From NCBI RefSeq assembly GCF_001194135.2, contig NC_068995.1, positions 55,117,601 through 55,181,600 on the forward strand: a DNA stretch of 64,000 nt, written 5' to 3'. This document shows, one piece after another, positions 181 to 51,175 of this stretch; within the stretch, counting starts at the first letter, position 1, and each line of letters starts with the position of its first letter. The position numbers and the translations under genes are program-made. The notes under the pieces are model-generated. The model had not been told where the DNA came from. It saw only the letters and a program-made list of their open reading frames with translations, and did no database searches. The DNA comes from Octopus bimaculoides. Its lineage: Eukaryota.

Positions 181-496
181 GTAAATATTGATGCCTTGTA
201 CAACTAATCTGTATCTATATTTATACTTCTACCCTTATGGGGTTTATTTTACTAGAAAGTAATACATTTGTATTGCCTATATTTTGTCATTGAAATATAT
301 ATATATATGCATGTATATGTGTGTGTGTAGTGAGAGGATAAGGGGCGAATAGTTGGGCAAGTTTTTCATGTAATAACAGTAAGACTATTTGATAAATGTA
401 ACCGCATGCGACACAAACAAATAATTAAATAACAGGAAAAGCTGTGCCCAATGAATTGTAAGCCGAATACAAGAAGAAGAAATATAACAGACTTAC

Positions 497-536
497 GTTT
501 CAAGGGAAAGTTTTACCAGTGCAATGTGGAAAAAAA
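497..536 (-). CDS. Stop-containing exon, 40 nt, FFPHCTGKTFP*, homologous to 23311-23347 and 24593-24629
   Basis: tttcttacttcag|T TTT TTT CCA CAT TGC ACT GGT AAA ACT TTC CCT TGA AAC|GTAAGT. The flanking intron is also similar to the 23.2-23.4 kb region. Confidence 0.5.
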
Positions 537-996
537 CTGAAGTAAGAAACAGAATCCCGGAAGGATATCATACTTACTCAAAGTGCTTCTTTGAAATGTA
601 AAATCAGTAAACAGTTTAGATCACGCGTGATGTATAACCATACGTGAAGTTAGAGCGAGAAGTATAAAGTGAAAGAAAGATTTCAATGGAAAAGATGTCA
701 AAGTGCAAGTGAAGCATTTGAATAATGAAAGTGTACATGTTTAAGAAAGACATATATGTGTATATTTGTGATATATGGAGTAGGGGGAAATAAATATTCG
801 TACATGTCAAAATTCTTTATTTATTTAATTTCTAATGAACATAAATGGGATATACCAATACTACATTTGCATACACATACATGAACATGAGCATTTCTTG
901 ATTTGTTATATATATATATATATATNNNNNNNNNNNNNNNNNNNNNNNNNNNNNNNNNNNNNNNNNNNNNNNNNNNNNNNNNNNNTATATATATAG

Positions 997-3338: not shown

Positions 3339-3549
3339 AAAGGCGGCGAGCTAGACGCAAACTTAGCACCCGGGCGAAACGCTTAGTGGTATTCCGTCTG
3401 CCTTTACGTTTTGATTTCTAATTCCCTCGACTTTGCCTTTCATCCTTTCGGATTCGATAAATTAAGTACCAGTTGCGTACTGAGGTCGATCTAATCGACT
3501 GGCCCTCTTCCCCCAAAATTCCGGCCTAGTGCCTAGGGTAGAAAAGAAT
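3339..3549 (+). mobile_element. SINE family 1, near full length
   Basis: aaggcggcgagct...ttagcac...gcctttcatcctttcgg..tcgataaattaagtaccagttgcgtactg...gtagaaaagaat. Recurs many times in the window. Confidence 0.85.
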
Positions 3550-4784
3550 ATCTCCGTATTGAAACATTATACTTTTGCAGCTACGATATACACTATCTAC
3601 ATGATTCCAGTCTGGGAACATTTCATATTATGGAATGTAGGGATATGTGAAGTGAGATGCTTGAATCTTTAGATCGTCAAATTAATGCCGTGCGATATTT
3701 GTTCCAGCGGCTCTTTACATTCTGATTTCAAGTTCCACCGATTTCGTCTTTACTTTTCATCTTTTCGAGGTCGTTAAAATGAATATCAGTGAAATTCTGT
3801 GTTTTATGGTATAGACTAAACACATCCCATTGATAATGCTGGTGTTCAACCTAAATCCGAAGTTTTTATTGTAGATATATAACCATTAAAGTTTTCATCT
3901 CTGAGGGTAACATAATTCGGAGGTGTTATTTTCCTATTCTAAATAATCTAATTCTTAAAGGAAAATGTTCAACAACGATTCTGCCACATCGATCAGGATT
4001 TTTGCAAACGCTTATCCCTTTCACAAACTTTAACACGATTTGCATTTTACCTGCATCTCAATGATATTAATTTTTTCATTATTAGGTGGTGAGTGGAGAG
4101 CTCTTCGAATTCAATACAAGAATTTCTAGAACGCTTTCGTTTTCAGTTTTCGTCCCATATTTCCTTATGATGAGAGCTTAGAATTATTTACCAAGTGTAT
4201 ACTATATTCCTTTTCACTCTTTTTTCTTTCAGTTTGCCAACTACTATTGCGTACATTCCCCCCCCCCCAAAAAAAAAAGCGATCTTCTATCTACAGGACA
4301 TCCTATCTGGAGTATTATCGTTTTCGTCGACTTTTTGTTACGTTAGAGAGGTTGATTTAATATTTAAAATCTTAGTTTTTATATATTCATTTTTAAATTA
4401 GTAATATTACATATTAGAATAGTTCTTTCTTATTGTAAATCTTTTGACAAAATATTATGAATATCCTGACTTCAAATGTTTTTTTGCTATTCTCGTATCT
4501 TTCAGTGAAGACACATTTGGCTCTTAAATTTAAAGCAGTTTACAAAACATGATGTCACAGGATTGACGCTGACATAATTGCATACGCTGTCGTAAATATA
4601 GTAACAAATGACACAATTTGAAAACCTGTAAGTATACTTTCAGTTGGAAAGTTCTTTTATTGCTTGATGTGATAACAAAAATGACGGAAGCAACATGTAA
4701 AAATTATACTTTAATGAAGCGTAAGAATTAAAACTTATGTTTAAATTATGTACATAATTTACATTATTTACATTATTTAACTTT

Positions 4785-4910: not shown

Positions 4911-6133
4911 GTGATGTTAGCTTAAAATTACCTAATTTATATATGAAATCAAAGGTTTATATTTAATTTGATATATAGAGATTTCAGATATAGAGAAAAG
5001 AGAAATTTTATTTCAAAAATTACATAAATCAAATTCGGATTAGAATTTCGTAATTTCATTATTTTAGTAAAATGTACATACAAGAAAGAAAGTGTAACTA
5101 ACAACTACTGTAAATGAGAACGTGGGGGATATTTTCACTATCGCACCTGAAAAATACAGCGGAAGAGTAAAATTGAATGTAAACAATTATAGAAATGCGT
5201 ATTTCAAAATAAAATTGAGCATCGCTTACTCATTTATCACATAATAATTCATGCAAAATTGTTGAAGGGAAAGTAACTGAAACTGAAATTATCTTTACTG
5301 ACATAATAATATTTATACAATTAAATGACAACTCCCGAGTTTAATGGTGTGACCAAATACACAGGTTGGATTTGTGTCCATATCCTGAGTAATACATGTA
5401 GTAACGAGATATTTAACAATGTGTACTTCAATTTGTTGTACGTATATTATGAGGAAAGATTTCATTTCTTAACTCTCTTGGAAGCGAATATTGGACAACA
5501 TAATGTAAACACATTATAACATAATTCATTTAAATAAATTTTTGATTTTTACATTTATCATTGCTTGAATAGGATGAGAAATTTGCTGAACATATTTGTA
5601 TTTAACGTGTTAGCAAAATGTGGAGAGGCATTTTATGAAAGTTTCAGCAAAAATTTAAAATCGACAATATCTTACACTTTTGGAATATGACATAGAGATA
5701 GATGACAGAATGGAGAAGTAAATAAGAATAAAAAACGCCAGTCCTGACGAAATTTAAAAGATTTTATCAAAAATATCTGTTGTTGTCTTCTGTAAGTTTG
5801 ATATCTCAGGATTTTAATTTTGGAATCAGAAAACATACTTTCGTGGTGTTTGCAGTCAAATAAAGTATGATTTGTTTTAGCGATAACATGATTCTACTGG
5901 TGTACTAAATAACAATTAAATGTGCATTTATGAAATAAAATTGAACAATATGTTATAGTTCGCTTCCATTTTGTGAGTTAGATGATTTTGTCTGCTTGTG
6001 TATAAAATGCAATAATGAAAATGTAATCAAAACTGCTATGCCTCACAAATATATATTTTTTTACGACATTTTCTATAAAAACATCAACCGATTGATGCAC
6101 GTAAAGGAATGGTTTCAAACAAATGCAACTAAC

Positions 6134-6192
6134 CAGTTTTTCCAGAGTCAAGATTTTGTTCGTTTAAGCTCTGGGATTTGATGTTACAGAAC
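6134..6192 (-). CDS. Possible gene A downstream exon, 59 nt, phase 2-1, (K)FCNIKSQSLNEQNLDSGKT
   Basis: Strong acceptor cattttcctatttcag|G and donor G|GTTAGT. Only the phase-2 start frame is open, but the exon is asymmetric. Confidence 0.35.
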
Positions 6193-8121: not shown

Positions 8122-8214
8122 TTGTGCTCGTCAGCGGTCATTTTCTTATTGTTGGCCAAACATTTCAGCTTATATTGCTGGAAGTCTTCAATCACAAACT
8201 TGAAAGATCTCAAA
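8122..8214 (-). CDS. Gene A exon 7, 93 nt, phase 2-2, LRSFKFVIEDFQQYKLKCLANNKKMTADEH(K/N)
   Basis: ttccttcgtttcttgtttcaag|TTTGAG...GAGCACAA|GTGAGT. Only the phase-2 frame is open. Confidence 0.75.
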
Positions 8215-9457
8215 CTTGAAACAAGAAACGAAGGAAATGTAATATTTTAGCTAATCACGGGAGAAAAAGATGTCTGGATTTATGTTTGAAAACTTTGGAT
8301 AAACAACATTTTATAAGCACCAAAATAAAGCATAAGATGTGGCAACATTTATTGAAATGTAACATTTAAAAAATATTTTCTGCGGTTTCATTCTTTTCCA
8401 TATGTTCTATGTTTTATTTATTTTTTCGAACGAGTACAGGTCTTAAAGTATAGTTTCTGTATCTATTGAATACAATATAACATTATTTATAGCTTATAAT
8501 TTTTTCATCATTCTATTCTCTTTCTCATCTTAACTTTCACTTCTACTCTCCCTATTTCAAATAAGCTTGGAAGTTTCTGCAGTGTCAATCAACGTAATAT
8601 ATTTTTCAGGATAATGAATCACACCACATATATCTGGCTCAAAAACACATGTATAGGTTGTATGGCGTGCTTCCAAATTTTCTAAAGCATAAGAAAAAAT
8701 GTGCAGATGGAATATTGAGGTTTGAGATGATTTTAGAAGATATACAAAAAATTCGAAATGAAATGTTTCAAGAAATGGCCGTAAAACTTTCTCTTCATAT
8801 TCTCCGCTTTCTAAATCATTTATGCAAGCACGTGATAATTCACATGGTGTGAATTTGGAGAGCAATCTGTTCCTTGATTTTCATGCTCAGTTTATGGATT
8901 TGATTAATTCGTTGAAACATTTGCATCAGTAGAATTCATTAGATGTAATATTTATAGACATATGGTTTCCTAGTAAATTTGATTATCAAAAGACAAGACA
9001 AATTTGAACGTGTTTTGTTCTTTTTCTCTATATAGGAAGAAGAGGAAATGCGGAACACTTTAAAGTATAAAATATTCATACAAGTTCCAAATGTTGAATT
9101 ATCATTATTTTTATTAACTTCTTTAGTACCGTTAAACTGTAATAGATACTATGGGATGTGACTGATATCTATTCGTTACATTAAGATATAGATGTATACT
9201 TACAAACGCCGGTCTCCTAGGAGAACAACAGTGATCTTATCCTTTGTGACCTTCATACTAAAATGGAAAGTTTGGAAATAATACTGCTATTCATTTTTAT
9301 TGGTACAAAATACAATTACCATCGAAGTCTAGTTTTTGATTAGTGCGCGACATAAGACAGTGTATACATAATCTCATATTCGAATTAAAATTATGAAAAT
9401 AGAATTAAATGAAAATGTCTGTACATGTTTGCATGTGTGAGTGAATATGTATGACAA

Positions 9458-9508
<51 letters not shown>

Positions 9509-9694
9509 AGGAGAGAGAAATACAGAGGTACACACAGAGGCATTTCTGCTGGTTCGCATGATATTCTTATGGAATAGAAAATGTGTAGCAAAGAAATTTT
9601 CCCTAATATCAGTTTGCCTGAATCAAATAAGACTTTTTCTCTTTTACTTTTTACTGCATTCAAATATAAACTAATAGGGGAAAAGACATACGTA

Positions 9695-9795
9695 TATATA
9701 TGTATGTATCTATGTATGATATATATGTTTATATGATATATATATATATATCATATAAACATATATATCATACATAGATACATACATATATATAT
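9695..9795. repeat. AT-rich palindrome
   Basis: atatgtatgtatctatgtatgatatatatgtttatatga(TA)n tcatataaacatatatatcatacatagatacatacatat. Confidence 0.85.
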
Positions 9796-9829
9796 ATGCA
9801 TGTCATTTCCCCTATTATGTATATATATA

Positions 9830-10241
9830 ATCATAAATATACAGGGATTAGCATTGAGTTGCTTCTCCAACATACTGAAAATTTAGAAATAGCAGTCAAA
9901 GAACTACTGCTTCTAAACTACAAATTTTTCTCTAAACGGATGGCGATATTTATGGCACACATAGAACAAAAAACCGGAGGGAAAAGCATAAACAAAACAA
10001 GTCTTTAGTTAATTGGATACAAATCGTTTCATGGTTAAGCGAAAAGCTTCGTATCCAATTAACTAAAGACTTGTTTTGTTTATGCTTTTCCCTCCGGTTT
10101 TTTGTTCTATGTGTGCCATAAATATCGCCATCCGTTTAGAGAAAAATTTGTAGTTTAGAATCAGTAGTTCTTTGACTGCTATTTCTAAATTTTCAGTATG
10201 TTGGAGAAGCAACTCAATGCTAATCCCTGTATATTTATGAT
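9830..10241. repeat. Near-perfect palindrome, 191-bp arms and a 30-bp loop
   Basis: 9830-10020 is the reverse complement of 10051-10241. I saw one mismatch. Confidence 0.9.
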
Positions 10242-10715
10242 GATAAATGGTTTTACCGATAAAGGTTTTTTCATACTGAACTACTTGGCAAAATTGCTAA
10301 TTATTAATTGACGATTCCCTGCCCTTATTCTTGGATATTATGTATATATACATGCATACATATATGTATATATATATATATATATATATACATGTACACA
10401 CAAACATACGCACTCACACTAATACACACACACGCGCATATATATTTAATCTCGATTTATACATGTAGATCCGTGCCCAGTAAACAGAAACGTTCAGGAA
10501 ACGGGCAGCTCGTTGTTACAATATTTGCTTGTATTAACACTTACAGAAGCACACTTACATAATGCCACACATACGCGTGTGTACATGTGTGTTGTAACAA
10601 GGATAAATACATGCGTATATGTACTAATAATTATAAACTACAAGCCACAAGATAACAGAAGATGAATATTGAAGTTAACAAATGAATTAATAAGGGATAT
10701 CAAAAAAGAACTTAC

Positions 10716-10742
10716 TCCTCCCAATCATTGACATTTGGTAAT
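10716..10742 (-). CDS. Gene A exon 6, 27 nt, phase 2-2, LPNVNDWE(D)
   Basis: tttcctttgattttcag|A TTA CCA AAT GTC AAT GAT TGG GAG GA|GTAAGT. Confidence 0.75.
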
Positions 10743-10815
10743 CTGAAAATCAAAGGAAATACATTTGTTACTTGCAAATGTTGTAAAATTTTATAACTTT
10801 TGGATGGGGCAAAAA

Positions 10816-10939
10816 AAAAGTGTTTGAATTTTGTAGAATATAAATAGCTACAAATTAAAAAGTGTTTGAATTTTGTAGAATATAAATAGCTACAAATTAA
10901 AAAGTGTTTGAATTTTGTAGAATATAAATAGCTACAAAT
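10816..10939. repeat. 42-bp tandem repeat, 3 copies
   Basis: Unit aaaaagtgtttgaattttgtagaatataaatagctacaaatt. Confidence 0.9.
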
Positions 10940-11465
10940 AGAATCACACAAGACATACATAAAAATGACCATACGTGACATAATTATGAAGAACAGTAAA
11001 GTTATTTGTCGAGTATTCAAACATTGTTCATGATGCAAGGAAAAGCAATGTAAAAGTCGAGCTCAGAATACTGAGGGTATTTAACCTAAAATATATTGCA
11101 GTACCAAACATATAGATATAGCATATTGATGAAAACAAATAAAAGAAACTCAAAATGTTAAGGAAGTGTGATTTCGTGTCTCGTGGCTGGCCGCCTACAC
11201 TTTTTTCTGCAAAATAGGGGTAGTTTATCCTTTTCGGGCTATATTATTAGCATTATCCTGCGTTTGAGAATTTAAAAATCACTTCTTTAACTACATAATT
11301 TAGTCTTATTTTAAAATAAGCTAATATGATAACCATTTCAAATTAATAATATTTTATGACGTATATTTTTCGTATGAGAAACAATTTGTATCAATAAAAA
11401 TTAAATGTTACTGGAAATATCAATATCCACCCGGCTAGCCTGAGTATTAAACGTCCGTATTAAAC

Positions 11466-11552
11466 GTAGGACACACAAATAGAGCAATAGTAGGACACAC
11501 ACATAGAGCGGGAGTAGGACACACACATAGTGCAGGAGTAGGACACACACAC
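11466..11552. repeat. 24-bp minisatellite, about 3.6 copies
   Basis: gtaggacacacac/aatag... starting at 11466, 11490, 11514 and 11538. Confidence 0.9.
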
Positions 11553-11580
11553 TTAACAGCAATTGATATTATATACTTAC

Positions 11581-11613
11581 TCAGTTGTGCTGCTGCCGCC
11601 ATCTTTATTACTG
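11581..11613 (-). CDS. Gene A exon 5, 33 nt (30 nt with the second CAG acceptor), phase 2-2, SNKDGGSSTT(E)
   Basis: gttttcctttacattcag|CAG|T AAT AAA GAT GGC GGC AGC AGC ACA ACT GA|GTAAGT. Confidence 0.75.
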
Positions 11614-12262
11614 CTGAATGTAAAGGAAAACGTAACAGTTAAATTTATTAACATAATTAATTAAATTTAAATATAACCAATTAGGAATATATTAACCCCA
11701 TTTATATCAATTTTAAGATTTACTTAACAGAATTTATATATATAGAGGCATGTTTGTATATGAACTTGAAGCTTGTACATTGTTATGATATCCAATGTGG
11801 TGTTGTGCTGAGTTGGATATCATTATCATATCAAGGGTGGTTCTAAGACAATGAAACACATGTCTATAATTATGGAAATGACAGGTGTTTCATTCTTAAT
11901 CCGTAAACTATATTTAAATTTAATTATACTGTAAGATCAGATTTTTTTCCGTTGCGATATCATGTTACTGATTGGTGTATATTTGATATTTGTCATTGGG
12001 TAAGCAATAGACACATCAGTTGATTGCGGATTATAATATTACAGTAACTATTGTATACGAATATACATATTTATATGTATGCATATATAACCGCATCTTA
12101 ATGGGAGATGTAGATATCAATCACTTGTCGCACACTGCCTATGAACATAGAATTCGCTAAGTTTCTATCACGCTGGAACATAAGTCTTGATCAGGTGTTT
12201 GCACAACGGAGAAAATATCACAGTCATCGATTATTTCGGATAATTCAGGTTTCAATACTTAC

Positions 12263-12298
12263 TCTCCTACACCTAGGAATCCTGTCAGGCCGTCGGAT
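12263..12298 (-). CDS. Gene A exon 4, 36 nt, phase 2-2, SDGLTGFLGVG(D)
   Basis: gttaatatttttcag|A TCC GAC GGC CTG ACA GGA TTC CTA GGT GTA GGA GA|GTAAGT. Shares GFLG with exon 3. Confidence 0.78.
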
Positions 12299-12949
12299 CT
12301 GAAAAATATTAACGTATAAACAATTATTTCATTCTGAAAAATAAATATTATATATATATATATATATATATGAGTCTGCTGAGATAATTGGAATACACAA
12401 CACCTAATAACCTGACGGTATAACTTTTCTACCCCGCTGATGAGATTTTTGCCTAATACAATCATTTAATTACTGTAATTTAATATTTAGTCTAAATTGC
12501 AACAGCTGTAAGAGAACATGTTGGATTTTTGCAGTTATTAAATTATACTAATGCTACATTTCCATTTTTGAAATTTTCTTTATATGTATATANNNNNNNN
12601 NNNNNNNNNNNNNNNNNNNNNNNNNNNNNNNNNNNNNNNNNNNNNNNNNNNNNNNNNNNNNNNNNNNNNNNNNNNNNNNNNNNNNNNNNNNNNNNNNNNN
12701 NNNNNNNNNNNNNNNNNNNNNNNNNNNNNNNNNNNNNNNNNNNNNNNNNNNNNNNNNNNNNNNNNNNNNATATATAAGAACACATTAAATCCTTCAATTT
12801 CACTTTAACATTTAAATTTAATTTGTATCAAAATATTTTCGACGCATTGAAACCGCGGCCTATTCACTGATAAAACTTCGTGCTGCATGAATTTGTGTCA
12901 ATGAACAGGTCGCTGTGAAACTATATGAAAGTGTTTTCAAAATACTTAC

Positions 12950-12988
12950 GCAATATTTCCTAAGAAACCTGCAAATACTTCTCGTAAA
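12950..12988 (-). CDS. Gene A exon 3, 39 nt, phase 2-2, LREVFAGFLGNI(A)
   Basis: ttattatttcatttcag|T TTA CGA GAA GTA TTT GCA GGT TTC TTA GGA AAT ATT GC|GTAAGT. Confidence 0.78.
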
Positions 12989-14097
12989 CTGAAATGAAAT
13001 AATAAATTTAGTACATCAGTTATATGATATAAATGAACATAAGTGAATGACATTTTAGGGTATAATAGCTATTCCATTTAATTACTCACGATTAACATTC
13101 AATGTCATTTTAAGTAATAGTTGATTATATATCTTTAAAAGGTTGCGAAGTTTCTCCAATTAGATAGTCACGAAATAGTGACCAAATAATTCTGCTTATG
13201 TATTTAGATTGAATGGACCACGAATGTACGTACGTGCCTGCATGTGTGTGCGAGTGTGTGTTTGTGTGTGTACGTGTATGCGTGTGTGAGAGAGAGAGTT
13301 TGTGTGTTTGTGTCTGTGTGTTTATGTGGTTGTGTTTGTGTATTAGTATGTGTCTGTAAGTTTTAAACTATTTTCGGTATCGAGACAACCTTTTCGGGAA
13401 GTTCCATAGATTTGAGGAGTATAAATACCTTTTCAACACAATTTCACTCAGGTCTTTATAGCTTTCTATTGTTAATTAGAATATTAAGGATTGTTTAACT
13501 ATGCATTTGATACCTGGATCAGTGAACACTGGACGCCATCTGCAGCAACACATTTTGATATGCAGGGAGCAACTGAAGCAAGTAAGACACCCTCGTAAAC
13601 CACTGGATTGGTAATAGTTATGGACAAGTGATTGAAGTCGACTGTTTGTAAGACAGTAGGAATCTTTAAGAATGACAGGATGTTTCTTGATTAAATGTAA
13701 ACTTAATTCATCTATACGTTAAAGTAAATTATGTTAACAGTTACTCAAATTCATTCCCACTACTTTGTGCGAAAGTACATTTATATGCGTGCAGGCATCT
13801 CGAGAGTCTTTCAGAAATTCTATTAATGATCTTTTCATTGGTCCACATTATAGCCAGGGATTCCTTGGATTCCTAAGAGTCGGCATCTCTTGTAAATGAT
13901 ATTGTATATATTTTTTTTTTGGGGGGGGGCGTGTCTTACTATAGAGCAGGTTATGTTATACTGAATTTTATCTTACTTCAGTCGGCTCACATAATCGGCC
14001 AAACATGTTGAATGTCTCTAATTGATTCTCTTGAAGCTGGCGACATGGTTGCATAACGTTTCTTAAATATATATATAGCCTATATACATATAAGTAA

Positions 14098-14143
<46 letters not shown>

Positions 14144-14366
14144 AAAGAAAGAAAGGATAAAGAGAACAATGGCACAGTTAGAATTATATTTTATGTATAA
14201 AGTCTTACAGCTGTTTCAGGGAAAATCCAATATATCCCTTCATCGGAGACGGTAATAGTGGAAGAATGGATTATTACATCTATAAGAGATTTGTAGTAAG
14301 AAGTGAGAGGGTTTGGTTGACTCCAATACACTTCATAACCTTTATGTGTATATATATATATATATG

Positions 14367-14413
<47 letters not shown>

Positions 14414-14814
14414 ATACATATATATGTGTGTGTGCGTGTGTATATATACATATATACATGTATATATTATGTATATGTATGTATATATGTGTGGATGTTT
14501 AGAAAATGTAATTCTTTATAGTTTTATCTACTTCCAGTCCCAACGTTTAAAGAATGCCTATTTTGTGTATACACCTGTAAATGATATTGTTATAGGAACA
14601 ACTTCTATATTAATATAAGCTAAAATTTAATAACTCACCCCTTCAATGCCACTTTTCCAAGAGCAGGTCTGTAAGGGAAAAAAAATAAAATCTTTCATAA
14701 ATTAAATATCGAGGAATTCATGTATAGGCACACACACCCCCACACACACACACACGCGCGCGGTCAAGGAATAGGGGCGATCCAATCCCGGCTAGAACAT
14801 TACTCAAATGAACT

Positions 14815-14876
<62 letters not shown>

Positions 14877-15040
14877 GTGTAGGTAACAATTAGAGGAGTT
14901 TAAATCCTCTAAGGGTTAATTATATAAAACGGTCGATTGATATATTGATATTTTATATTAGATTGATAATATGGAATGTATAATATGAAGGTATACAGAA
15001 CACATATTAAAATAATATTACATAAGAAAGTATAACTTAC

Positions 15041-15073
15041 ATGTTGCGTTTGCTCCTGTTACCTTTGTTTGTC
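15041..15073 (-). CDS. Gene A exon 2, 33 nt, phase 2-2, TNKGNRSKRN(I), containing an RxKR furin-type site
   Basis: gatgtttctttcattacag|G ACA AAC AAA GGT AAC AGG AGC AAA CGC AAC AT|GTAAGT. Confidence 0.75.
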
Positions 15074-15307
15074 CTGTAATGAAAGAAACATCAATAAAGT
15101 CAGAAATGAGATGGTTCGTAATTTGTTGAAGACACATGAGTAAAAATTACGTAATATGTTTTCTGTTTTAATATATAATTCGTAGTTTGATACTTACAAA
15201 ACTATGCAGACAACTCAACTGGACAAATATGTGGCAATGTAAATACTGTAAACTTCAGGTAGATTTATAATTCTAATTTGAGCCTGAAAGTTACATCTAA
15301 TGATAAA

Positions 15308-15497
15308 CGAGGGGGCTGCTGAAAAGTTCCTGGCTTTAGGAGTATCGCGAAATGTGCGGCTGGACGTCCAATCTTCCGTACTTAGAAAAACTGAAGGACC
15401 GCTGCAATAAGTGTGTGAATCTGAGAGGGAAATATGTTAACTAAAATCATAATTAACTGATTCTTATTCCCAAAGCCATGGACTTTTCAGCACACTC
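15308..15497 (+). mobile_element. Mariner-derived MITE / internally deleted element
   Basis: Imperfect terminal inverted repeats (gagggggctgctgaaaagttcctggcttt ... aaagccatggacttttcagcacactc). The interior encodes LEKLKDRCNKCVNLRGKYVN*, resembling the mariner transposase C-terminus. Confidence 0.8.
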
Positions 15498-15765
15498 ACA
15501 TATCATAAACTCAACAAATAGAGAAGGGAATTCCGTAGGTTGTGGAATTATACACCACTAAATGCTGTTTGATTGTCGTCTGATTTGTAGAAATAAATTT
15601 TATCCCAATATTATCTATGTGATGAATACCATATGCTACATATATAATAATTAATATGAATTAATATTTCCAAATTAATATAATCATATTGCAATTCAAA
15701 AGAGATTTAAAGATGTTACACAGGCATAATCAGATTATTTCATAAATTAAATATTAATGACTTAC

Positions 15766-15863
15766 CGATTAGATTTTTTCTCCTCCAGAATGTCCTCCGG
15801 AAAGGCAAATGGATCATCAAAAGTCACCAGAAAGCAAGCGATGGCATTTCTAAATGTTTTCAT
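15766..15863 (-). CDS. Gene A exon 1 from the ATG at 15863, MKTFRNAIACFLVTFDDPFAFPEDILEEKKSN(R). Alternatively a 150-nt internal exon, 15915-15766.
   Basis: Donor CG|GTAAGT at 15765, phase 2. The frame is open from an in-frame acceptor (tcatattcacag|A at 15915), and TATATAAAA lies 43 nt upstream of the ATG, so both readings are possible. Confidence 0.65.
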
Positions 15864-15905
15864 TTCATATTGTTTGAAGTGGTAAATCGGAAACAGTAGT
15901 AGGCG

Positions 15906-15914
15906 TTTTATATA
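15906..15914 (-). promoter_or_regulatory. Possible TATA box (TATATAAAA) for gene A
   Basis: Lies 43 nt upstream of the ATG at 15863. It overlaps the alternative internal-exon reading. Confidence 0.35.
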
Positions 15915-16145
15915 TCTGTGAATATGACATGGACTTTTAATTAGAAGAATAATATGAACAATACATAAATACATATTGATATATGCACTCATTAACTACC
16001 ATATATATATTGGTGGAATTCAGCTTGCAGCAAGAACAGAGCCAACTATTGTTTCTATTACATCGACATATTTGGAAATATAGAAAATGTCCTTATTGAT
16101 ATCTCCGTAGATATTTAATCTCTTCTTTTCATTCTTATACACATA

Positions 16146-16560: not shown

Positions 16561-17439
16561 AGGAGGAGGTGGAGATTGTGGAGGAGAATATCCTTTTTGT
16601 ATATATTCATTTTTGTTTTAATTGAATTTCAGCATCAATTTTCTATATTTTTATTATTGTTTCATAGCAAATAATATTACGATACTGTTTGATAGTCAAA
16701 AATATTTCCTGCCATCTGGTTAATTTTCAATAACGTTTTGGTGTATTTCTCAAATTTCTGTATGGTAACTTGAAGATTTTCTTAACGTAGGCTTTCGTAT
16801 TACAATTTTCTCGAGTAAATATATCCATTTTATTCCTTCAATTAAAACATGAAATCAATGGGATTCTTAGGTGTTTATGTACTTATTGTCAAAAACGTAA
16901 ACGCGACCATTTTGATGCTTACATGCGAATACACAATAGAAATTAAATCTGCTTACGGTCCATCCCAAACCTTTTCCATAGCGTCCAAAATTATCGTATG
17001 AGAATAGGCCAGTCGTTGCTCGAATTCTTCAATGTCCGAGCACGTTTCCCAGCTAAAATGTATGAATGATATAAGGAAATATTTAGTGAGAGGCTTAATA
17101 ATTTATTATAAGTTAAAATCATAAGTATATGTATAAAGGAGAGAAAATGGTGAGGAACTGCTAGGTTTCGCTTCTTCAAAATTTATGAGGTACAAAAAGA
17201 ACATGCTATAATTGTGTTCAGAGTTACACTGATTCATCTTTAGAAAATGTCGTTTAATTTATACAACAGGAGCAACTAATCTTTAACAGTTGCACTAAAA
17301 TGTCTCGTCTGTTGCTAACCGAGCTTTGGGAGTTTTTCTCATTGCCGATGTACACTTAGAATTAATCAAATAATTGTCAAATATTTTCTCTCTCATAATA
17401 ATGATTTCAAATTTTTGCAACAAGGGCAGCTCGAGGAAG

Positions 17440-17613
17440 GGGATTGAGTTGATTATATCGACCCCAGTGCGTAACCGGTATATATCTTATCCACCCCGAA
17501 GGAGTGAAAGGCAAAGTAGATCTCTCCGGGTTTTTAACTCAGAAAGTAGCGGCAGACAAAATACCGCTAAGCATTTCGCCCGTCGTGCTTGCGATTCTGC
17601 CAGCTCGCCGCCT
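17440..17613 (-). mobile_element. SINE family 1
   Basis: Reverse complement of the 3339 element, ending ctgccagctcgccgccttt. Confidence 0.85.
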
Positions 17614-18695: not shown

Positions 18696-18949
18696 AATAT
18701 ACTGAAAACAAAAATAATACTATTATTTTCAAACATTTTATTTCTAAATTAGTTCAGAGTTGCAGGGGAAGCATCAGTATAATGTCAGTCCGTACTCAGC
18801 GTAAACGATAACTGTAGAAACATAAATCAAGTCATCATAAGACAATCGTAGTAATCTAATATACAAGTGTCTATTATGCTAAGATCGTTAAAAAAAAGTT
18901 TTTTCTACTATAACACTACATTAGATTTTTCAATATTTTTTAACCCTAA

Positions 18950-19163
18950 AGGGCCGGTGAGCTGGCAGAAGCGTTAGCACGCTGGGTGAACTGCTAAGTG
19001 ATATTTCGTCTGTTTTTACGTTCTGAGTTCAAATTCCAACGAAGTCGACTTTACCTTTCATACTTTCGGGGTCGATAAATCAAGTACCAAATGCGTACTG
19101 GGGTCGCTCTAATCGACTGACCCCCTCCTCAGAAATTGCGGGCCTTGTGCCTAGAATAGAAAA
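18950..19163 (+). mobile_element. SINE family 1
   Basis: gagctggcagaagcgttagcacg...gtcgactttacctttcatactttcggggtcgataaat...gccttgtgcctag. Confidence 0.85.
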
Positions 19164-19829
19164 TAATATGTATTAACCGTCCAATAATAAGATTGTCAAA
19201 TTCCATTGCACAGACAACCAATGAATGATTCATTTCTGAATATATTAGGTGTGTTTCCAAATATGATAAAACTTATCAAGACGGGTTTCATATACACATG
19301 TATGTGTAAGTGTGATTGTTTGAAGGTGATATTTTTCTACTACTTAAGTAAACATAAGCATACCTCATAAAGAAGTTTTCCCACGCATGCGCTCTTGTCT
19401 TGTATTTCATGAGACGTAATTCATTATCCTTTTCCTTAGCAGAAGACCTAGAAAGAAAATAGTGAGAATAGAAATTCATAATTTCAGTGTCCAAAGGTTA
19501 CTTTAAGTTTAGATGAAATAAAGTACTAAGGATTGAAAAGTTTTCCTAATATTCATAATGTTTTCTCTTGATTTTGTGACATTAAATTTTCCTGTGATTC
19601 GTTGGTGTCATTTCGTACCATACTCTAATATTTACTGACCTAGCTATAATTCTCCAAATTGCATCGGAGTTCTTCACTCTTCTCTCTCTTTAAGGGTCCA
19701 AAAGAAAAAAAAGGAACAGGGAAAAAAAACTAAAGAAGGAAAAGAATAACCAAGACCATGTGTATGATTACTTTGTTGATATATTCGTATTTATATGAAA
19801 CTATATCTCAGGAAACTTAGATACGTTTC

Positions 19830-20189: not shown

Positions 20190-20960
20190 CTGGCGGTATA
20201 TTCTCCACATTGTGCAAATAATGTATCGCTTATGGCGGTGCAGGTTAGAAGAGTTTAAATGCTGGTGTAATGCAAGGAGATACCCTCTTTCCAAACCTCT
20301 TTATGCCATGTCTTGAAATGATCATGAAGAGCATCGACTGGCCGGGTGGCGTGATCATCAACGGTGAACAAGAAACGCATTTCCGAATTGCAGCTGTTAT
20401 GGTACACATCATTGAAACCGTAGACCAGGTGCAGATACTGCGAACAGAGTTGAACTCCCAGAAATTATAAGAATGTCTTACAATGAACTGCATAAAAACA
20501 AAATATTCTCAGCCGGAAGTCATAGCATAGGAAGTCATTGGATGCAAAGAATTCAAGGCGTTAAAAGTATAATTCTATAGTGAATAATGCAAGATATAGA
20601 CGCTGAAATCACAAGCAGGATAAGGGCAGAATTCAAGGCATTTAACAGAGCTGGACAGATACATATGAGCCAAACACTTGAATAGCATCCTCCTACCATC
20701 ACACTAATATGCAACTGGGACGAATTTCACTACGAAGAAGATAGAAAATCGAATAACTACGACACAATGGGGCTACTACCATTAAGGGAGTATATTGGAA
20801 ACGAGATAATTCGAGAACGGAATGGAGAGATCGTTGTGATTGCAGAGTTCCTAAAGCACAAGGTTCGTTGAGCTAGACATGGTGCACAGGTAGATCCTTG
20901 CATTTGCCGATTGTTATCCAAAAGGATATTTTCAAGGCCTCCATAACAATGAGTAGCACT
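20190..20960 (+). mobile_element. Degraded RTE-clade LINE reverse transcriptase fragment
   Basis: Translates to GVMQGDTLFPNLFMPCLEMIMKSIDWPGGVIINGEQETHFRIA (RT QGD motif through to the degenerate FADD region), then DIDAEITSRIR and HKVR*ARH, with stops and frameshifts. Confidence 0.85.
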
Positions 20961-21689
20961 TTGATCATGCAATATGCAACATACAATATATATATATATA
21001 TANNNNNNNNNNNNNNNNNNNNNNNNNNNNNNNNNNNNNNNNNNNNNNNNNNNNNNNNNNNNNNNNNNNNNNNNNNNNNNNNNNNNNNNNNNNNNNNNNN
21101 NNNNNNNNNNNNNNNNNNNNNNNNNNNNNNNNNNNNNNNNNNNNNNNNNNNNNNNNNNNNNNNNNNNNNNNNNNNNNNNNNNNNNNNNNNNNNNNNNNNN
21201 NNNNNNNNNNNNNNNNNNNNNNNNNNNNNNNNNNNNNNNNNNNNNNNNNNNNNNNNNNNNNNNNNNNNNNNNNNNNNNNNNNNNNNNNNNNNNNNNNNNN
21301 NNNNNNNNNNNNNNNNNNNNNNNNNNNNNNNNNNNNNNNNNNNNNNNNNNNNNNNNNNNNNNNNNNNNNNNNNNNNNNNNNNNNNNNNNNNNNNNNNNNN
21401 NNNNNNNNNNNNNNNNNNNNNNNNNNNNNNNNNNNNNNNNNNNNNNNNNNNNNNNNNNNNNNNNNNNNNNNNNNNNNNNNNNNNNNNNNNNNNNNNNNNN
21501 NNNNNNNNNNNNNNNNNNNNNNNNNNNNNNNNNNNNNNNNNNNNNNNNNNNNNNNNNNNNNNNNNNNNNNNNNNNNNNNNNNNNNNNNNNNNNNNNNNNN
21601 TATATATATATATATATATATGTATATATAGATTTTAGCATGAGTAGCTTTTGTTAAAAATAATCTTTACAAATCGTTTAAACGTGGCT

Positions 21690-23310: not shown

Positions 23311-23347
23311 GTTTCAGTGGAAACTCTTAGCAATGTAACGAGTAAAA
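23311..23347 (-). CDS. Chain B stop exon, copy 2, 37 nt, FTRYIAKSFH*
   Basis: Same as 24593-24629 except ACT (Thr) in place of GCT (Ala). Both splice sites are intact. Confidence 0.5.
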
Positions 23348-24264
23348 CTGAAGCTAGAAACAAACACGCAAAGGAAACGAACTGAAGGCAATAAACGGAG
23401 TAGTTAGAGGGAGGCGTATAAGCCTGTGAAGTATTAAGAGTAATGTATATGATACATCAAAAATTTTTGTTAAAGATAATTGTAAACAGTGACGAAAATC
23501 ACAAAGATCAACGCAAATTCACAAAAATATTCTGAAAATATCAAAAAATAATAAAAGTAATGACTAATTAAATGGAGGTCTCCATCAAAACTCCGCCAAA
23601 TGTTGAAGTATGTTCCGGGACGGAATATCTGTCCCACCCTTCTTTTTTTTTATTGTATCCCACATTCTGAAGCACATTCAATTCGCATTAAGAAAAATCT
23701 CTCCATCTTACCCTTATATCGTACTTCTCACATAATTTTGTTCTTTTGATTTATATTCCTTTATGTGAAATTAAAATAAAATTCAAGATATTTGGCTGTT
23801 AATTCNNNNNNNNNNNNNNNNNNNNNNNNNNNNNNNNNNNNNNNNNNNNNNNNNNNNNNNNNNNNNNNNNNNNNNNNNNNNNNNNNNNNNNNNNNNNNNN
23901 NNNNNNNNNNNNNNNNNNNNNNNNNNNNNNNNNNNNNNNNNNNNNNNNNNNNNNNNNNNNNNNATATATAAATATATACAGAGAGAGAGAGAGAGAAAGT
24001 GAGAGAGTGAGAGAGAGAGAGAAAGTGAGAGAGTGAGAGAGAGAGAGAATGTGAGAGAGTGAGAGAGAGAGACACACACACACATATGCATATTTGTGTT
24101 TGTGTGTATGTGTGTGCCTGTCTGTGTCTGTGTGTGTTCTTTGTGTGTCTATGTGTATGTGTGGTTTAATCAATAATAACAATCAAGAATTAACACATTA
24201 ATCATTAATTTAGGATTACATCATACAAAGGCCGACACTACCCGTGGCAAACAATTGTTTACGA

Positions 24265-24592: not shown

Positions 24593-24629
24593 GTTTCAGT
24601 GGAAACTCTTAGCAATGTAACGAGCAAAA
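24593..24629 (-). CDS. Chain B stop exon, copy 1, 37 nt, FARYIAKSFH*
   Basis: tttctagcttcag|T TTT GCT CGT TAC ATT GCT AAG AGT TTC CAC TGA AAC|GTAAGT. Confidence 0.55.
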
Positions 24630-25446
24630 CTGAAGCTAGAAACAAACACGCAAAGGAAACGAACTTTACGTCTTTAAGTGAAGGCAATAAACGGAGTAGT
24701 TAGAGGGAGGCGTATAAGCTTATGAAGTATTAAGAGTAAATGAAGTTGTTTGTAACAGTATGTTTAAAACTTAGATTTATGGGATAGGACTTCCATAATG
24801 ACTCAGTTTAAACTTTAAAATCTAAATATCGGTGCTTAGTCCTAATTTTTTAAAAAGTCTAAAGAAATGTTTCCTATGCATTTCTAATATGATATCATTT
24901 CTAACACTCGTAATAATACATCGGGATTTATAAATAAAAGTAGAAAATATCGCAAATCAGCTAGAACATCGAAATTAACATTAAAATTAGAAAGAGAATG
25001 AAAGTAAAATATGTATGAATATTGCTGTACGCTCTTACCATAATTTTAAATTCAACAAAAACAACCTATTTTAATTAATTAAACCAATAAGTATTTATCG
25101 TTTAATCACTCTGCAAAAAAAGCATTGATAAATACAATTTTGACAAATATTTCATTAATTTGTGGTTGAGAGTCAAATGTCTAAGATACTTCTCGCATTG
25201 TGTGTTTGAATTCAAAATTATGAAACTGTTATAACTAATATAAATTATCGAAATGAGAATAACTCTGCTGAAACCAAAACTAGAAGAAATTAAAGAAAAT
25301 ATACAAGTTAAGCACATATTCTATGATATATATATATATATCGAAATACGCTTATGCAACTGATTGAAATTTGAGATAATTTTCTATCCCTCTTATAGCG
25401 ATTACAAAAAAAAAAAAAAAAAAAAAAAAACTGTGAAATTTCATAA

Positions 25447-30309: not shown

Positions 30310-30512
30310 TGCCCACCGGGGGATAAACACAGAGGGGACAAACAAAGGGATTAAGTCGATTACATTGACCCCAGTGCATGACTGGTACTTATTTAATCGA
30401 CCGCGAAAGGATGAAAGACAAAGTCAACCTCGGTGGAATTTGAATTCAAAACGTAACGGCAGACGAAATACCGCTGCGCATTTCGCCCGGTGTGCTAACG
30501 ATTCAGCCAGCT
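30310..30512 (-). mobile_element. SINE family 1
   Basis: gaaaggatgaaagacaaagtcaacctcgg...gcatttcgcccgg on plus is the reverse complement of the family consensus. Confidence 0.8.
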
Positions 30513-50994: not shown

Positions 50995-51175
50995 CTAAGT
51001 TGGGTGATCTGGCAGAAGAGTTAGCACGCTGGGAAAAATGCTTATTGGCATTTCGGCCGTCCACACGTTCTGAGTTCCATTCCCGGCGAGGCAGACTTTG
51101 CTTTTCATCCTTTCGGAGTCGATAGAATTAGTACCAGTCAAATACGGGGGTCAATTTAATCGACTGTTCACTTTC
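50995..51175 (+). mobile_element. SINE family 1
   Basis: ctggcagaagagttagcacgctggg...cagactttgcttttcatcctttcggagtcgata. Confidence 0.8.

What the first reader, a model, noticed from the sequence alone, without database searches (positions are those of the whole stretch)
8122..15915. Hidden micro-exon gene: seven symmetric phase-2 exons forming one ORF
Seen: exons at 15863/15915-15766, 15073-15041, 12988-12950, 12298-12263, 11613-11581, 10742-10716 and 8214-8122 each have a GTAAGT or GTGAGT donor. The six downstream exons have pyrimidine-rich AG acceptors and 3n lengths. Phase 2 is the only frame open across all of them, giving a 119-aa stop-free peptide. Five consecutive exons are only 27-39 nt. 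Established: symmetric exons can be skipped without frameshift, and this architecture defines the secreted micro-exon gene (MEG) proteins of Schistosoma. Inference: a possibly lineage-specific cephalopod gene that can produce up to 2^5 isoforms from the five micro-exons, and that ORF-based annotation would miss.
Basis: partly seen in the sequence, partly recalled or inferred. Interest (0 to 1): 0.85.

Follow-up and report, generated by a model that had tools for sequence, protein, structure and literature searches.

The report
Octopus micro-exon gene, already annotated
The seven tiny exons are real and belong to an already annotated but uncharacterised Octopus bimaculoides gene (LOC106881475). 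It has 13 visible coding exons and belongs to an octopus-only family of probably secreted proteins whose gene layout resembles the micro-exon genes of blood flukes.

Summary
All seven exons sit at the stated coordinates with the stated splice sites, lengths and single open frame.

The chain is incomplete. Two more in-frame exons lie between them: 14668-14639 (30 nt) and 9257-9204 (54 nt). The 9-exon peptide matches RefSeq XP_052829322.1 (LOC106881475 isoform X3, Octopus bimaculoides) at 100% identity. The 7-exon peptide matched nothing.

The whole CDS maps to the minus strand at 19447-5064 in 13 exons. Eleven consecutive exons are symmetric phase-2 (84, 96, 150, 33, 30, 39, 36, 33, 27, 54, 93 nt). 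A 14th exon, encoding the signal peptide, falls by synteny in the assembly gap at 21003-21600. The flagged gap at 12593-12769 is intronic and harmless.

So the gene is not hidden. RefSeq lists five isoforms, and none skips a 27-39-nt exon. A tandem paralog skips its 30-nt exon, and a NAGNAG acceptor adds or removes one Ser. The 2^5-isoform idea is unsupported.

Homologs were found only in Octopus species, and nothing matched in Pfam or the PDB. Family features are a signal peptide, four conserved Cys, a conserved RxKR site just before the micro-exon region, and a hydrophobic C-terminus. dN/dS is about 0.9 in the micro-exons against about 0.3 in the flanking domains.

This is a convergent, MEG-like architecture, not a MEG homolog.

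The parts
21003..21600 (.). Assembly gap that most likely hides coding exon 0, the signal peptide (about 50 nt, ending in phase 2).
   Evidence: Synteny with O. sinensis. L002 2914 aligns to window 21610 and L002 3600 to window 20991, and the O. sinensis signal-peptide exon lies between them at L002 3001-3053. No signal-peptide-like exon was found in the assembled sequence upstream. This placement is inferred, not seen.
19364..19447 (-). Exon E1, 84 nt, phase 2-2. RefSeq X1-X3 start at ATG 19410. It encodes (T)SSAKEKDNELRLMKYKTRAHAWENFFM.
   Evidence: Exact spliced mapping of P0001. The acceptor ttctag and the in-frame upstream codons match the orthologs' 84-nt exon.
16957..17052 (-). Exon E2, 96 nt, phase 2-2. 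A cassette exon, present in isoforms X1 and X2 and skipped in X3. It carries conserved Cys 1.
   Evidence: Sequence. The residues SWETCSDIEEFEQRLAYSHTIILDAMEKVWDGP are present in P0015 and P0014 and absent from P0001.
15766..15915 (-). Exon E3, 150 nt, phase 2-2. It contains ATG 15863, the start of isoform X5, and conserved Cys 2.
15041..15073 (-). Micro-exon E4, 33 nt. It encodes TNKGNRSKRN, including the conserved RxKR site.
   Evidence: The RxKR conservation is shown in the alignment and the sequences.
14639..14668 (-). Micro-exon E5, 30 nt (PALGKVALK). Its counterpart in the tandem paralog is skipped in that gene's isoforms X3 and X4.
12950..12988 (-). Micro-exon E6, 39 nt (LREVFAGFLGNI).
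12593..12769 (.). Assembly gap inside intron 6. It has no effect on the reading frame.
   Evidence: The O. sinensis ortholog's corresponding intron has no N and no annotated exon, and the paralog's corresponding intron is likewise gap-free with no exon.
12263..12298 (-). Micro-exon E7, 36 nt (SDGLTGFLGVG).
11581..11613 (-). Micro-exon E8, 33 nt, or 30 nt from the tandem cag|cag (NAGNAG) acceptor at 11610. The two forms differ by one Ser (X1 versus X2).
   Evidence: The same NAGNAG acceptor is used in the paralog.
10716..10742 (-). Micro-exon E9, 27 nt (LPNVNDWE).
9204..9257 (-). Exon E10, 54 nt (MKVTKDKITVVLLGDRR). It begins the conserved C-terminal domain.
8122..8214 (-). Exon E11, 93 nt. It is the last of the eleven symmetric phase-2 exons and carries conserved Cys 3.
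6134..6192 (-). Exon E12, 59 nt, with a GTTAGT donor (phase 2 in, phase 1 out). It carries conserved Cys 4.
5064..5146 (-). Terminal coding exon E13, 83 nt including the stop TAA at 5066-5064. It encodes the hydrophobic C-terminus ISPTFSFTVVVSYTFFLVCTFY.
   Evidence: The best Kyte-Doolittle 19-residue window in X1 scores 1.65 and starts at residue 238.
5007..5012 (-). AATAAA, a candidate polyadenylation signal 52 nt after the stop codon.
   Evidence: Read directly from the sequence. Its use is an inference and was not tested.

Best explanation
The region is the body of Octopus bimaculoides gene LOC106881475. The window corresponds to CM046615.1:55117601-55181600, and the gene is on the minus strand.

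Shown:
- There are 13 coding exons at 19447-5064, and eleven consecutive exons are symmetric phase-2.
- The same architecture is conserved exon for exon in three other genes: the tandem paralog LOC106881480 (starting 7.6 kb beyond the window's left edge), a third O. bimaculoides paralog on another chromosome, and the O. sinensis ortholog.
- RefSeq isoforms differ by a 96-nt cassette exon, a NAGNAG acceptor and alternative 5' ends.

Inferred, as the most likely mechanism:
- The full product starts with a signal peptide encoded by an exon lost in the assembly gap at 21003-21600.
- It enters the secretory pathway and folds into an N-terminal helical domain and a small C-terminal domain, each with two conserved cysteines.
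- A furin-type proprotein convertase cuts it at the conserved RxKR (RSKR in exon E4).
- It is held at the cell surface by its C-terminal hydrophobic tail, either as a GPI-attachment signal or as a membrane span.
- The six micro-exons encode the stretch just after the cleavage site: an amphipathic, Gly/Leu-rich helix (IPALGKVALKGLREVFAGFLGNIASDGLTGFLGVG) followed by a Ser/Asp-rich linker.
- Every exon from E1 to E11 is 3n and in the same phase, so this stretch can gain, lose or skip modules without a frameshift. It evolves close to neutrally while splice sites and flanking intron are kept.
- The micro-exon block therefore acts as a rapidly evolving variable cassette between two constrained domains. 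Modest alternative splicing is documented. Mass combinatorial splicing is not.
For: Gene identity and structure:
- The 9-exon peptide is 100% identical over 100% of its length to XP_052829322.1 (E = 1.7e-92).
- An exact GT-AG spliced mapping of the 227-aa protein onto the window gives 12 exons. The 96-nt exon is present in X1 and X2.
- The same exon lengths and phases occur in L001, L002 and L003.
- Position on the chromosome comes from the 100% overlap of the window with L001.

Secretion:
- Signal peptides are present in P0023 (MPIIYIIFGLIIHCVPYTSS|AKE), P0022, P0024, P0025, P0019 and P0021.
- Synteny places that exon in the gap.
- Four Cys are conserved across most full-length members in the alignment.

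Convertase site: RSKR, RRKR, RSKR, RRKRR and RTKR occur at the same alignment position in diverged members.

C-terminal anchor: a hydrophobic tail lies at the extreme C-terminus in most members, and one member has a true stop-transfer end (YHYRRK).

Amphipathic helix: the hydrophobic moment is 0.38-0.55 over 18 residues in four members.

Rate pattern against O. sinensis: dN/dS is 0.36 for the N-terminal domain, 0.92 for micro-exons E4-E9 and 0.29 for the C-terminal domain. The 50-nt intron flanks of E4 and E6-E9 are about as conserved as, or more conserved than, the exons in most comparisons, most clearly against the tandem paralog.

Alternative splicing: see the isoform alignments.
Against: - No signal peptide is visible in the window or in any O. 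bimaculoides model of this gene or its tandem paralog. The closest O. vulgaris model (P0012) lacks one too.
- The duplicated block shared with the paralog ends about 80 nt upstream of E1, so each copy having its own signal exon is unproven.
- Cleavage, GPI or membrane anchoring and disulfides are inferred from motifs only. No predictor or experiment was available.
- AlphaFold models are of low confidence (mean pLDDT 34 and 43), so the domain picture rests on conservation.
- The dN/dS values for single regions rest on 42-109 codons each.
- RefSeq isoforms are computational models, and I could not inspect the RNA-seq support behind them.
- Skipping E2 (isoform X3) removes one of the four cysteines, which fits awkwardly with a disulfide-dependent fold.
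Confidence: 0.6

Rival explanations
1. MEG-style combinatorial diversification. The five or six micro-exons are independently skippable cassettes, and the gene produces dozens of protein variants from one locus.
For: - All eleven exons E1-E11 are 3n and phase 2-2, so any subset could be skipped in frame.
- The paralog's 30-nt exon is skipped in two RefSeq isoforms, and a NAGNAG acceptor is used in both genes.
- Conserved intron flanks around the micro-exons are typical of regulated exons.
Against: - None of the five current or four earlier RefSeq isoforms of LOC106881475 skips E4-E9.
- Across both tandem genes only one micro-exon skip is modelled.
- Every micro-exon has a perfect GTRAGT donor and a strong polypyrimidine-CAG acceptor. 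That fits constitutive recognition of very short exons at least as well.
Confidence: 0.12
2. A tail-anchored cytosolic protein. The O. bimaculoides tandem pair has lost the signal peptide. The product starts at MKYKTRAHAW..., stays in the cytosol, and is inserted into membranes post-translationally by its C-terminal hydrophobic segment.
For: - All RefSeq models of LOC106881475 and LOC106881480 and the closest O. vulgaris model lack a signal peptide.
- No such exon was found in the assembled upstream sequence.
- Homology with the paralog stops just upstream of E1.
- The hydrophobic stretch lies at the very C-terminus.
Against: - E1 has an acceptor at 19447 and stays open in frame upstream of ATG 19410. 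That upstream stretch encodes SSAKEKDNELRL, which is homologous to the post-signal-peptide residues of the orthologs (SSAKETDKELML).
- Synteny places the orthologous signal exon exactly inside a 598-N gap.
- The conserved RxKR site and the four conserved Cys make sense only in the secretory pathway.
Confidence: 0.12
3. A precursor of a released bioactive peptide, either antimicrobial-like or a neuropeptide. After the RxKR cut, the amphipathic Gly/Leu-rich peptide encoded by the micro-exons is the functional product, and the rest of the protein is a carrier.
For: - RxKR lies directly before an amphipathic helix with hydrophobic moment of about 0.5.
- The divergent member P0021 has several basic clusters (RLRR...RRTKR) encoded by 15-nt exons, as in multi-peptide precursors.
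- Fast evolution of this segment is common in host-defence peptides.
Against: - The window gene has no second dibasic site C-terminal of the helix to release it. It would stay attached to the conserved C-terminal domain and anchor.
- There is no Gly-Lys-Arg amidation signal.
- No similarity was found to any known peptide family.
Confidence: 0.12
4. A chance constellation of splice-like motifs in AT-rich, repeat-rich DNA, or a dead pseudogene.
For: - The window is about 30% GC with many GTAAGT-like strings (40 GTRAGT on the minus strand).
- No expression data could be inspected.
Against: - The joint chance of six 3n lengths and one shared open frame is about 1e-5. For all eleven symmetric exons it is below 1e-10.
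- The exact exon structure is conserved in four genes of two species with intact frames.
- dN/dS is about 0.3 in the two flanking domains.
- RefSeq models were built independently for it.
Confidence: 0.02

Closest known systems
Schistosoma micro-exon genes (MEGs)
   Same: - A run of very short symmetric (3n) exons separated by long introns and bracketed by longer 5' and 3' exons.
- A secreted, lineage-restricted product with no detectable domains, arranged in tandem gene copies.
- Fast evolution of the micro-exon-encoded residues.
- Some exon skipping.
- A divergent family member in O. sinensis even has six 15-nt exons. This is the modal MEG exon size according to bioRxiv 10.1101/2023.06.21.545858.
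   Different: - There is no sequence homology, and the family is in a mollusc rather than in Schistosomatidae.
- In the window gene, micro-exons of 39 nt or less make up only about 24% of the CDS, and two constrained domains flank them.
- All junctions are phase 2.
- The proteins carry a conserved RxKR site and a C-terminal hydrophobic anchor.
- Extensive combinatorial splicing is not documented.
RefSeq LOC106881475 / LOC106881480 / LOC106876345 (O. bimaculoides) and LOC115220626 and relatives (O. sinensis), all 'uncharacterized protein'
   Same: The window encodes LOC106881475 itself, at 100% identity. The other genes share its exon-by-exon architecture at 55-76% protein identity.
   Different: - The O. 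bimaculoides tandem pair is modelled without the signal peptide, probably because of assembly gaps.
- No function, name or publication was found.
Vertebrate fast skeletal troponin T (TNNT3) N-terminal mini-exons (comparison from my own knowledge, not tested here)
   Same: A block of about five consecutive very short exons that can be combined without a frameshift to vary one segment of an otherwise constant protein.
   Different: Troponin T is intracellular, Glu-rich and ancient, with well-documented combinatorial splicing. Here the product is probably secreted and octopus-specific, with little documented skipping.
Furin-activated, membrane-anchored proteins that expose a Gly-rich hydrophobic N-terminus, such as class I viral fusion subunits (analogy from my own knowledge only)
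   Same: The order signal peptide, N-terminal subunit, RxKR, Gly/Leu/Phe-rich amphipathic segment (…GFLG…GFLG…), C-terminal membrane anchor.
   Different: The protein is tiny (about 280 aa), with no heptad-repeat core and no homology or structural match. This is a lead for experiments, not a classification.

Membership tests
Schistosoma MEG superfamily | Internal exons are very short and are multiples of 3 (symmetric), interspersed with long introns. | tested here: met
   E4-E9 are 33, 30, 39, 36, 33 and 27 nt. E1-E11 are all 3n and phase 2-2. The introns between coding exons are 0.37-3.4 kb.
Schistosoma MEG superfamily | Most of the coding sequence is built from 10-20 very short exons of 6-81 bp, most often 15 bp (definition taken). 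| tested here: not met
   Only 6 exons are 39 nt or shorter, and they make up about 24% of the CDS (198 nt). Five exons are 83-150 nt long. A divergent relative (P0021) has ten exons of 15-39 nt but is still only about 25% micro-exon.
Schistosoma MEG superfamily | An N-terminal signal peptide, meaning a secreted product. | tested here: inconclusive
   No signal peptide is present in the assembled window or in the RefSeq models of this gene. It is present in the ortholog and in other paralogs, and its exon maps by synteny into the gap at 21003-21600.
Schistosoma MEG superfamily | Sequence relatedness to MEG proteins, and restriction to Schistosomatidae. | tested here: not met
   Profile searches of 1.84 and 5.8 billion proteins returned only Octopus proteins. 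There was no Pfam hit.
Schistosoma MEG superfamily | Protein variation generated by skipping micro-exons. | tested here: inconclusive
   The RefSeq isoforms show a 96-nt cassette and a NAGNAG acceptor in this gene, and a 30-nt exon skip only in the tandem paralog. Transcript reads could not be examined.
Octopus LOC106881475 family (unnamed) | Identity to the RefSeq protein, and the shared 13- or 14-exon architecture. | tested here: met
   Identity is 100% over 100% of the query. The spliced mapping is exact. The same exon lengths and phases are seen in L001, L002 and L003.
Proprotein-convertase (furin-type) substrates | An R-x-K/R-R motif in a lumenal or extracellular protein that is cleaved in vivo. 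| tested here: inconclusive
   The motif RSKR is present, and it is positionally conserved across diverged members. Cleavage and lumenal location cannot be tested with these tools.
GPI-anchored or C-terminally anchored surface proteins | An N-terminal signal peptide plus a C-terminal hydrophobic segment preceded by small residues (the omega site) with no cytosolic tail. | not testable with these tools
   The C-terminal 19-residue Kyte-Doolittle mean is 1.65. SGA, TGA or DGA lies 7-10 residues upstream of the tail in the close relatives. No GPI predictor or assay was available.

The most novel reading that the evidence does not exclude
Octopuses have independently evolved a micro-exon gene family analogous to schistosome MEGs. 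The genes encode secreted or surface proteins and have 11-15 consecutive phase-2 symmetric exons, some as short as 15 nt. In this reading, micro-exons multiply by tandem duplication and their coding sequence diverges faster than the flanking intron. The result would be a rapidly evolving, modular peptide segment placed just downstream of a convertase site. That would make 'micro-exon genes' a recurrent solution rather than a parasite-specific oddity.
Probability: 0.45. Interest if true: 0.65.

Novelty: new variant of a known kind. Interest (0 to 1): 0.5.

Why it matters
- Micro-exon genes have been treated as a peculiarity of blood flukes. A non-homologous family with the same logic in a free-living cephalopod would argue that long strings of symmetric micro-exons are a general route to fast-evolving secreted proteins. 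Here the evidence is the conserved architecture, conserved flanks and fast-diverging exon sequence. The octopus family would also offer a second system for studying how 15-39-nt exons are recognised.
- Practically, the case shows how assembly gaps truncate gene models. The signal-peptide exon is probably lost in the gap at 21003-21600.
- It also shows that leaving out two 30- and 54-nt exons was enough for a 5.8-billion-protein search to return nothing.
- For the gene itself, function is unknown, so the value lies in the testable hypothesis rather than in a demonstrated function.

Tried and rejected
- The 7-exon 119-aa peptide gave no hit against 5.8 billion proteins. The reason was the two missing exons, not a missing gene.
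- Pfam gave nothing above noise for the 148-aa peptide or for four family members (Syntaxin_2 at E = 0.19, SFV1_VP5 at E = 0.026, both far below their cut-offs).
- PDB sequence searches with the peptide and with the family profile gave only chance-level hits.
- AlphaFold2 with 2- and 9-sequence alignments gave mean pLDDT 34 and 43. Foldseek against the PDB had no match at E of 0.001 or below. No structural inference was drawn.
- I read the TATATAAAA at about 15913-15905 as a possible promoter. I rejected this because it lies inside coding exon E3.
- I considered BTB/T1, MATH, small-GTPase and BH3 resemblances for ...KITVVLLGDRRFLRSFKFVIEDF... and ...GFLGVGD... from memory. No tool supported any of them, so I dropped them.
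- A 33-nt candidate exon at 3210-3178 was rejected. It lies downstream of the stop codon in a repeat-like stretch.
- The search for a signal-peptide exon in the assembled upstream sequence found nothing. The old RefSeq N-terminal extension MLFMIISRHGIK (20334-20297, weak GTTTGG donor) looks spurious.
- No paralogous copy of the gene lies elsewhere in the window.
- Spliced mapping of P0019 on L005 failed with my simple GT-AG mapper. tblastn recovers most of its longer exons.
- Literature searches for the LOC and UniProt identifiers and for octopus micro-exon genes found nothing relevant.

Full report
**1. The observation**

- Each has a polypyrimidine tract, a CAG or AAG acceptor, and a perfect GTAAGT or GTGAGT donor.
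- The lengths are 33, 39, 36, 33, 27 and 93 nt for the six internal segments. The first is 98 nt from ATG 15863, or 150 nt from the acceptor at 15915.
- Only one frame is open through the chain, and it gives the 119-aa peptide.

I then scanned using splice signals only: at least 13 of 18 pyrimidines before AG, a GTRAGT donor, and an open frame.
- This finds 25 candidates on the whole minus strand and 7 on the plus strand.
- Every exon the scan recovers in 8122-15073 is 3n and open in the same frame. The alternative sites it also finds there are mostly not 3n.
Both are 3n and open in the same frame.

The pattern is far beyond chance.
- All six being 3n adds a factor of 0.0014.
- For all eleven symmetric exons, the product of the per-exon probabilities is below 1e-10.

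**2. The assembly gap**

The gap at 12593-12769 lies inside the intron between 12988-12950 and 12298-12263. Each exon is defined by its own splice sites. In the O. sinensis ortholog, whose locus has no N at all, the corresponding intron holds no annotated exon. The tandem paralog's corresponding intron is also free of N and holds no exon in its models. The proteins are colinear across this junction in the four genes mapped. The gap therefore does not affect the frame.

**3. What the gene is**

The 7-exon peptide found nothing among 5.8 billion proteins. The 9-exon peptide (148 aa) matched XP_052829322.1 at 100% identity and 100% coverage, with E = 1.7e-92. That entry is 'uncharacterized protein LOC106881475 isoform X3 [Octopus bimaculoides]'. 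A 56%-identical paralog, LOC106881480, lies on the same 58-Mb chromosome.

An exact GT-AG spliced mapping places the 227-aa protein on 12 exons. Isoforms X1 and X2 add a 96-nt exon. The coding exons, all on the minus strand, are:

| Exon | Coordinates | Length (nt) | Note |
|---|---|---|---|
| E1 | 19447-19364 | 84 | RefSeq ATG at 19410 |
| E2 | 17052-16957 | 96 | cassette exon |
| E3 | 15915-15766 | 150 | |
| E4 | 15073-15041 | 33 | |
| E5 | 14668-14639 | 30 | |
| E6 | 12988-12950 | 39 | |
| E7 | 12298-12263 | 36 | |
| E8 | 11613-11581 | 33 | alternative acceptor at 11610 gives 30 nt |
| E9 | 10742-10716 | 27 | |
| E10 | 9257-9204 | 54 | |
| E11 | 8214-8122 | 93 | |
| E12 | 6192-6134 | 59 | |
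| E13 | 5146-5064 | 83 | stop TAA |

E1 to E11 are eleven consecutive symmetric phase-2 exons. The window overlaps locus L001 at 100% identity. This places the window at CM046615.1:55117601-55181600 in assembly GCA_001194135.2.

**4. Isoforms**

Current RefSeq lists five isoforms.
- X1 (259 aa) contains all 13 exons.
- X2 (258 aa) uses the downstream CAG of the cag|cag acceptor at E8 and lacks one Ser.
- X3 (227 aa) skips E2.
- X4 (219 aa) starts inside E2.

None skips any of E4-E9. The tandem paralog has the same 13-exon layout. Its isoforms X3 and X4 skip its 30-nt exon, the counterpart of E5, and it uses the same NAGNAG acceptor. In-frame skipping of a micro-exon therefore occurs in the family, at least in the gene models. 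The 2^5 scheme has no support.

**5. The family**

A HMMER profile search of 1.84 billion representative proteins and a profile search of 5.8 billion proteins returned only Octopus proteins.
- O. bimaculoides: LOC106881475, LOC106881480 and LOC106876345.
- O. sinensis: LOC115220626 (76% identical, the ortholog), LOC115220522, LOC115220523, LOC115222984, LOC115223027 and others.
- O. vulgaris: several hypothetical proteins.

There were no significant Pfam or PDB sequence matches and no usable structure prediction. I found no paper naming these genes or describing octopus micro-exon genes.

The architecture is conserved.

| Gene | Coding exon lengths (nt) |
|---|---|
| O. sinensis ortholog (L002) | 53, 84, 96, 150, 33, 30, 39, 36, 30, 27, 54, 93, 47, 83 |
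| LOC106876345 (L003) | 50, 84, 96, 138, 33, 30, 39, 36, 24, 27, 54, 93, 68, 83 |

The divergent O. sinensis member LOC115223027 has 18 coding exons, 15 of them consecutive phase-2 symmetric exons, including six of exactly 15 nt. The first four 15-nt exons have nearly identical flanking intron sequence but very different exon sequence. That points to tandem duplication of micro-exons followed by fast divergence of the coding part.

**6. The missing signal peptide**

Full-length relatives begin with a clear signal peptide encoded by a separate exon of about 50 nt, lying 2.0-2.3 kb upstream of the 84-nt exon. An example is MPIIYIIFGLIIHCVPYTSS|AKETD....

In the window, E1 has an acceptor at 19447. 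It remains in frame upstream of the RefSeq ATG and encodes SSAKEKDNELRL, which is homologous to the orthologs' first mature residues.

Synteny shows where the exon should be. L002 2914 aligns to window 21610 and L002 3600 to window 20991, and the O. sinensis signal exon (L002 3001-3053) lies between them. In the window, that interval is the 598-N gap at 21003-21600. I found no such exon in the assembled upstream sequence.

The O. bimaculoides models are therefore probably truncated at the N-terminus. This is an inference. The alternative is that the tandem pair lost the signal peptide and makes tail-anchored proteins. I keep that as a rival.

**7. How it most likely works**

Shown:
- Two conserved blocks flank the micro-exon region: YK[ST]RxHAWENFF...AMxKxWD...LLxFPIYxFK...CF..VF.DPFA.P on the N-terminal side, and W..+I...D...VL..D.RFL+.F....F..Y..KCLD...+MT..E++FC on the C-terminal side.
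- Four cysteines are conserved across most full-length members.
- An R-x-K/R-R motif sits at the same position in diverged members, directly before the micro-exon-encoded segment.
- The extreme C-terminus is hydrophobic (Kyte-Doolittle mean 1.65 over 19 residues).
- The segment after RxKR contains an amphipathic helix with hydrophobic moment 0.38-0.55.
- Against O. sinensis, dN/dS is 0.36 in the N-terminal domain, 0.92 in E4-E9, 0.29 in the C-terminal domain and 0.50 overall.
- The 50-nt intron flanks of E4 and E6-E9 are about as conserved as, or more conserved than, the exons in most comparisons, most clearly against the tandem paralog.

Inferred: the protein is a secreted precursor that a convertase cuts at RSKR. 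It is held at the surface by a GPI anchor or a C-terminal membrane span. The micro-exon block encodes a rapidly evolving, modular segment at the new N-terminus. Uniform phase 2 lets modules be added, lost or skipped without a frameshift. I put about 0.6 on this overall picture and more than 0.95 on the gene model itself.

**8. Comparison with known systems**

The architecture works like a schistosome MEG. It has symmetric micro-exons between longer end exons, a secreted lineage-specific product, tandem copies and fast evolution. It is not a member of that family, for three reasons (one search gives the MEG definition).
- There is no homology.
- It is in a different phylum.
- Only about a quarter of the CDS is micro-exonic.

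It is best described as a convergent variant of a known kind.

**9. Verdict**

The gene is real, octopus-restricted, probably secreted and MEG-like in layout. It is already annotated, the exon chain given was incomplete, and combinatorial splicing is unsupported.

I score interest as moderate. The gene is not new to databases. However, neither the family-wide micro-exon architecture nor the gap-hidden signal exon turned up in the literature searched.

Noticed in passing
window 21003-21600: By synteny with O. sinensis, this 598-N assembly gap coincides with the position of the signal-peptide exon of LOC106881475. That would explain why all RefSeq models of the gene lack a signal peptide.
   Followed up: partly
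L001 10001-32285 (starts about 7.6 kb beyond window position 1, same strand): The tandem paralog LOC106881480 has an identical 13-exon layout. The duplicated block runs from window 19527 to 5040, and its introns are still 70-90% alignable. The first-exon region is 92% identical.
   Followed up: yes
L004 16964-32438 (O. sinensis LOC115223027): There are six consecutive 15-nt phase-2 exons. The first four have nearly identical flanking intron sequence but divergent exon sequence, which suggests micro-exon tandem duplication followed by fast coding divergence.
   Followed up: partly
window 9823-10248: A large inverted repeat lies in the intron between E9 and E10. Its arms are 208 nt, 97% complementary and separated by 10 nt. 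It looks like a foldback or MITE-like element. A perfect 51-nt palindromic TA-rich repeat lies next to it at 9693-9794.
   Followed up: no
window 10815-10939 and 11466-11551: Minisatellites sit right beside micro-exons. A perfect 42-nt x3 repeat ends 73 nt upstream of E9, and a 24-nt x3.6 repeat starts 30 nt downstream of E8.
   Followed up: no
window 23311-23423 and 24593-24671: A local duplication about 1.28 kb apart carries identical splice-like pseudo-exons (peptide ...FVSFACLFLASVLLVTLLRVSTE followed by GTAAGT). A related copy lies near window 330-550. The lengths are not 3n, and it is probably a repeat element.
   Followed up: no
window 3340-3550, 17447-17612, 18948-19174, 30354-30512, 51003-51185: Several copies, 74-82% identical, of an interspersed repeat of about 200 nt. 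It is also present in the paralog and ortholog loci and is SINE-like. One copy contains a spurious 33-nt 'exon' at 3210-3178.
   Followed up: no
window 20297-20334: The N-terminal extension in the older RefSeq models (MLFMIISRHGIK) comes from a short ORF with a weak GTTTGG donor. It is not homologous to the orthologs' signal peptide and is probably an annotation artefact.
   Followed up: partly
window 19500-64000, both strands: Outside LOC106881475, I saw no other cluster of strong splice-bounded open segments and no long ORF free of microsatellite or N. About two thirds of the window looks like gene-poor, microsatellite-rich sequence with 14 assembly gaps.
   Followed up: partly
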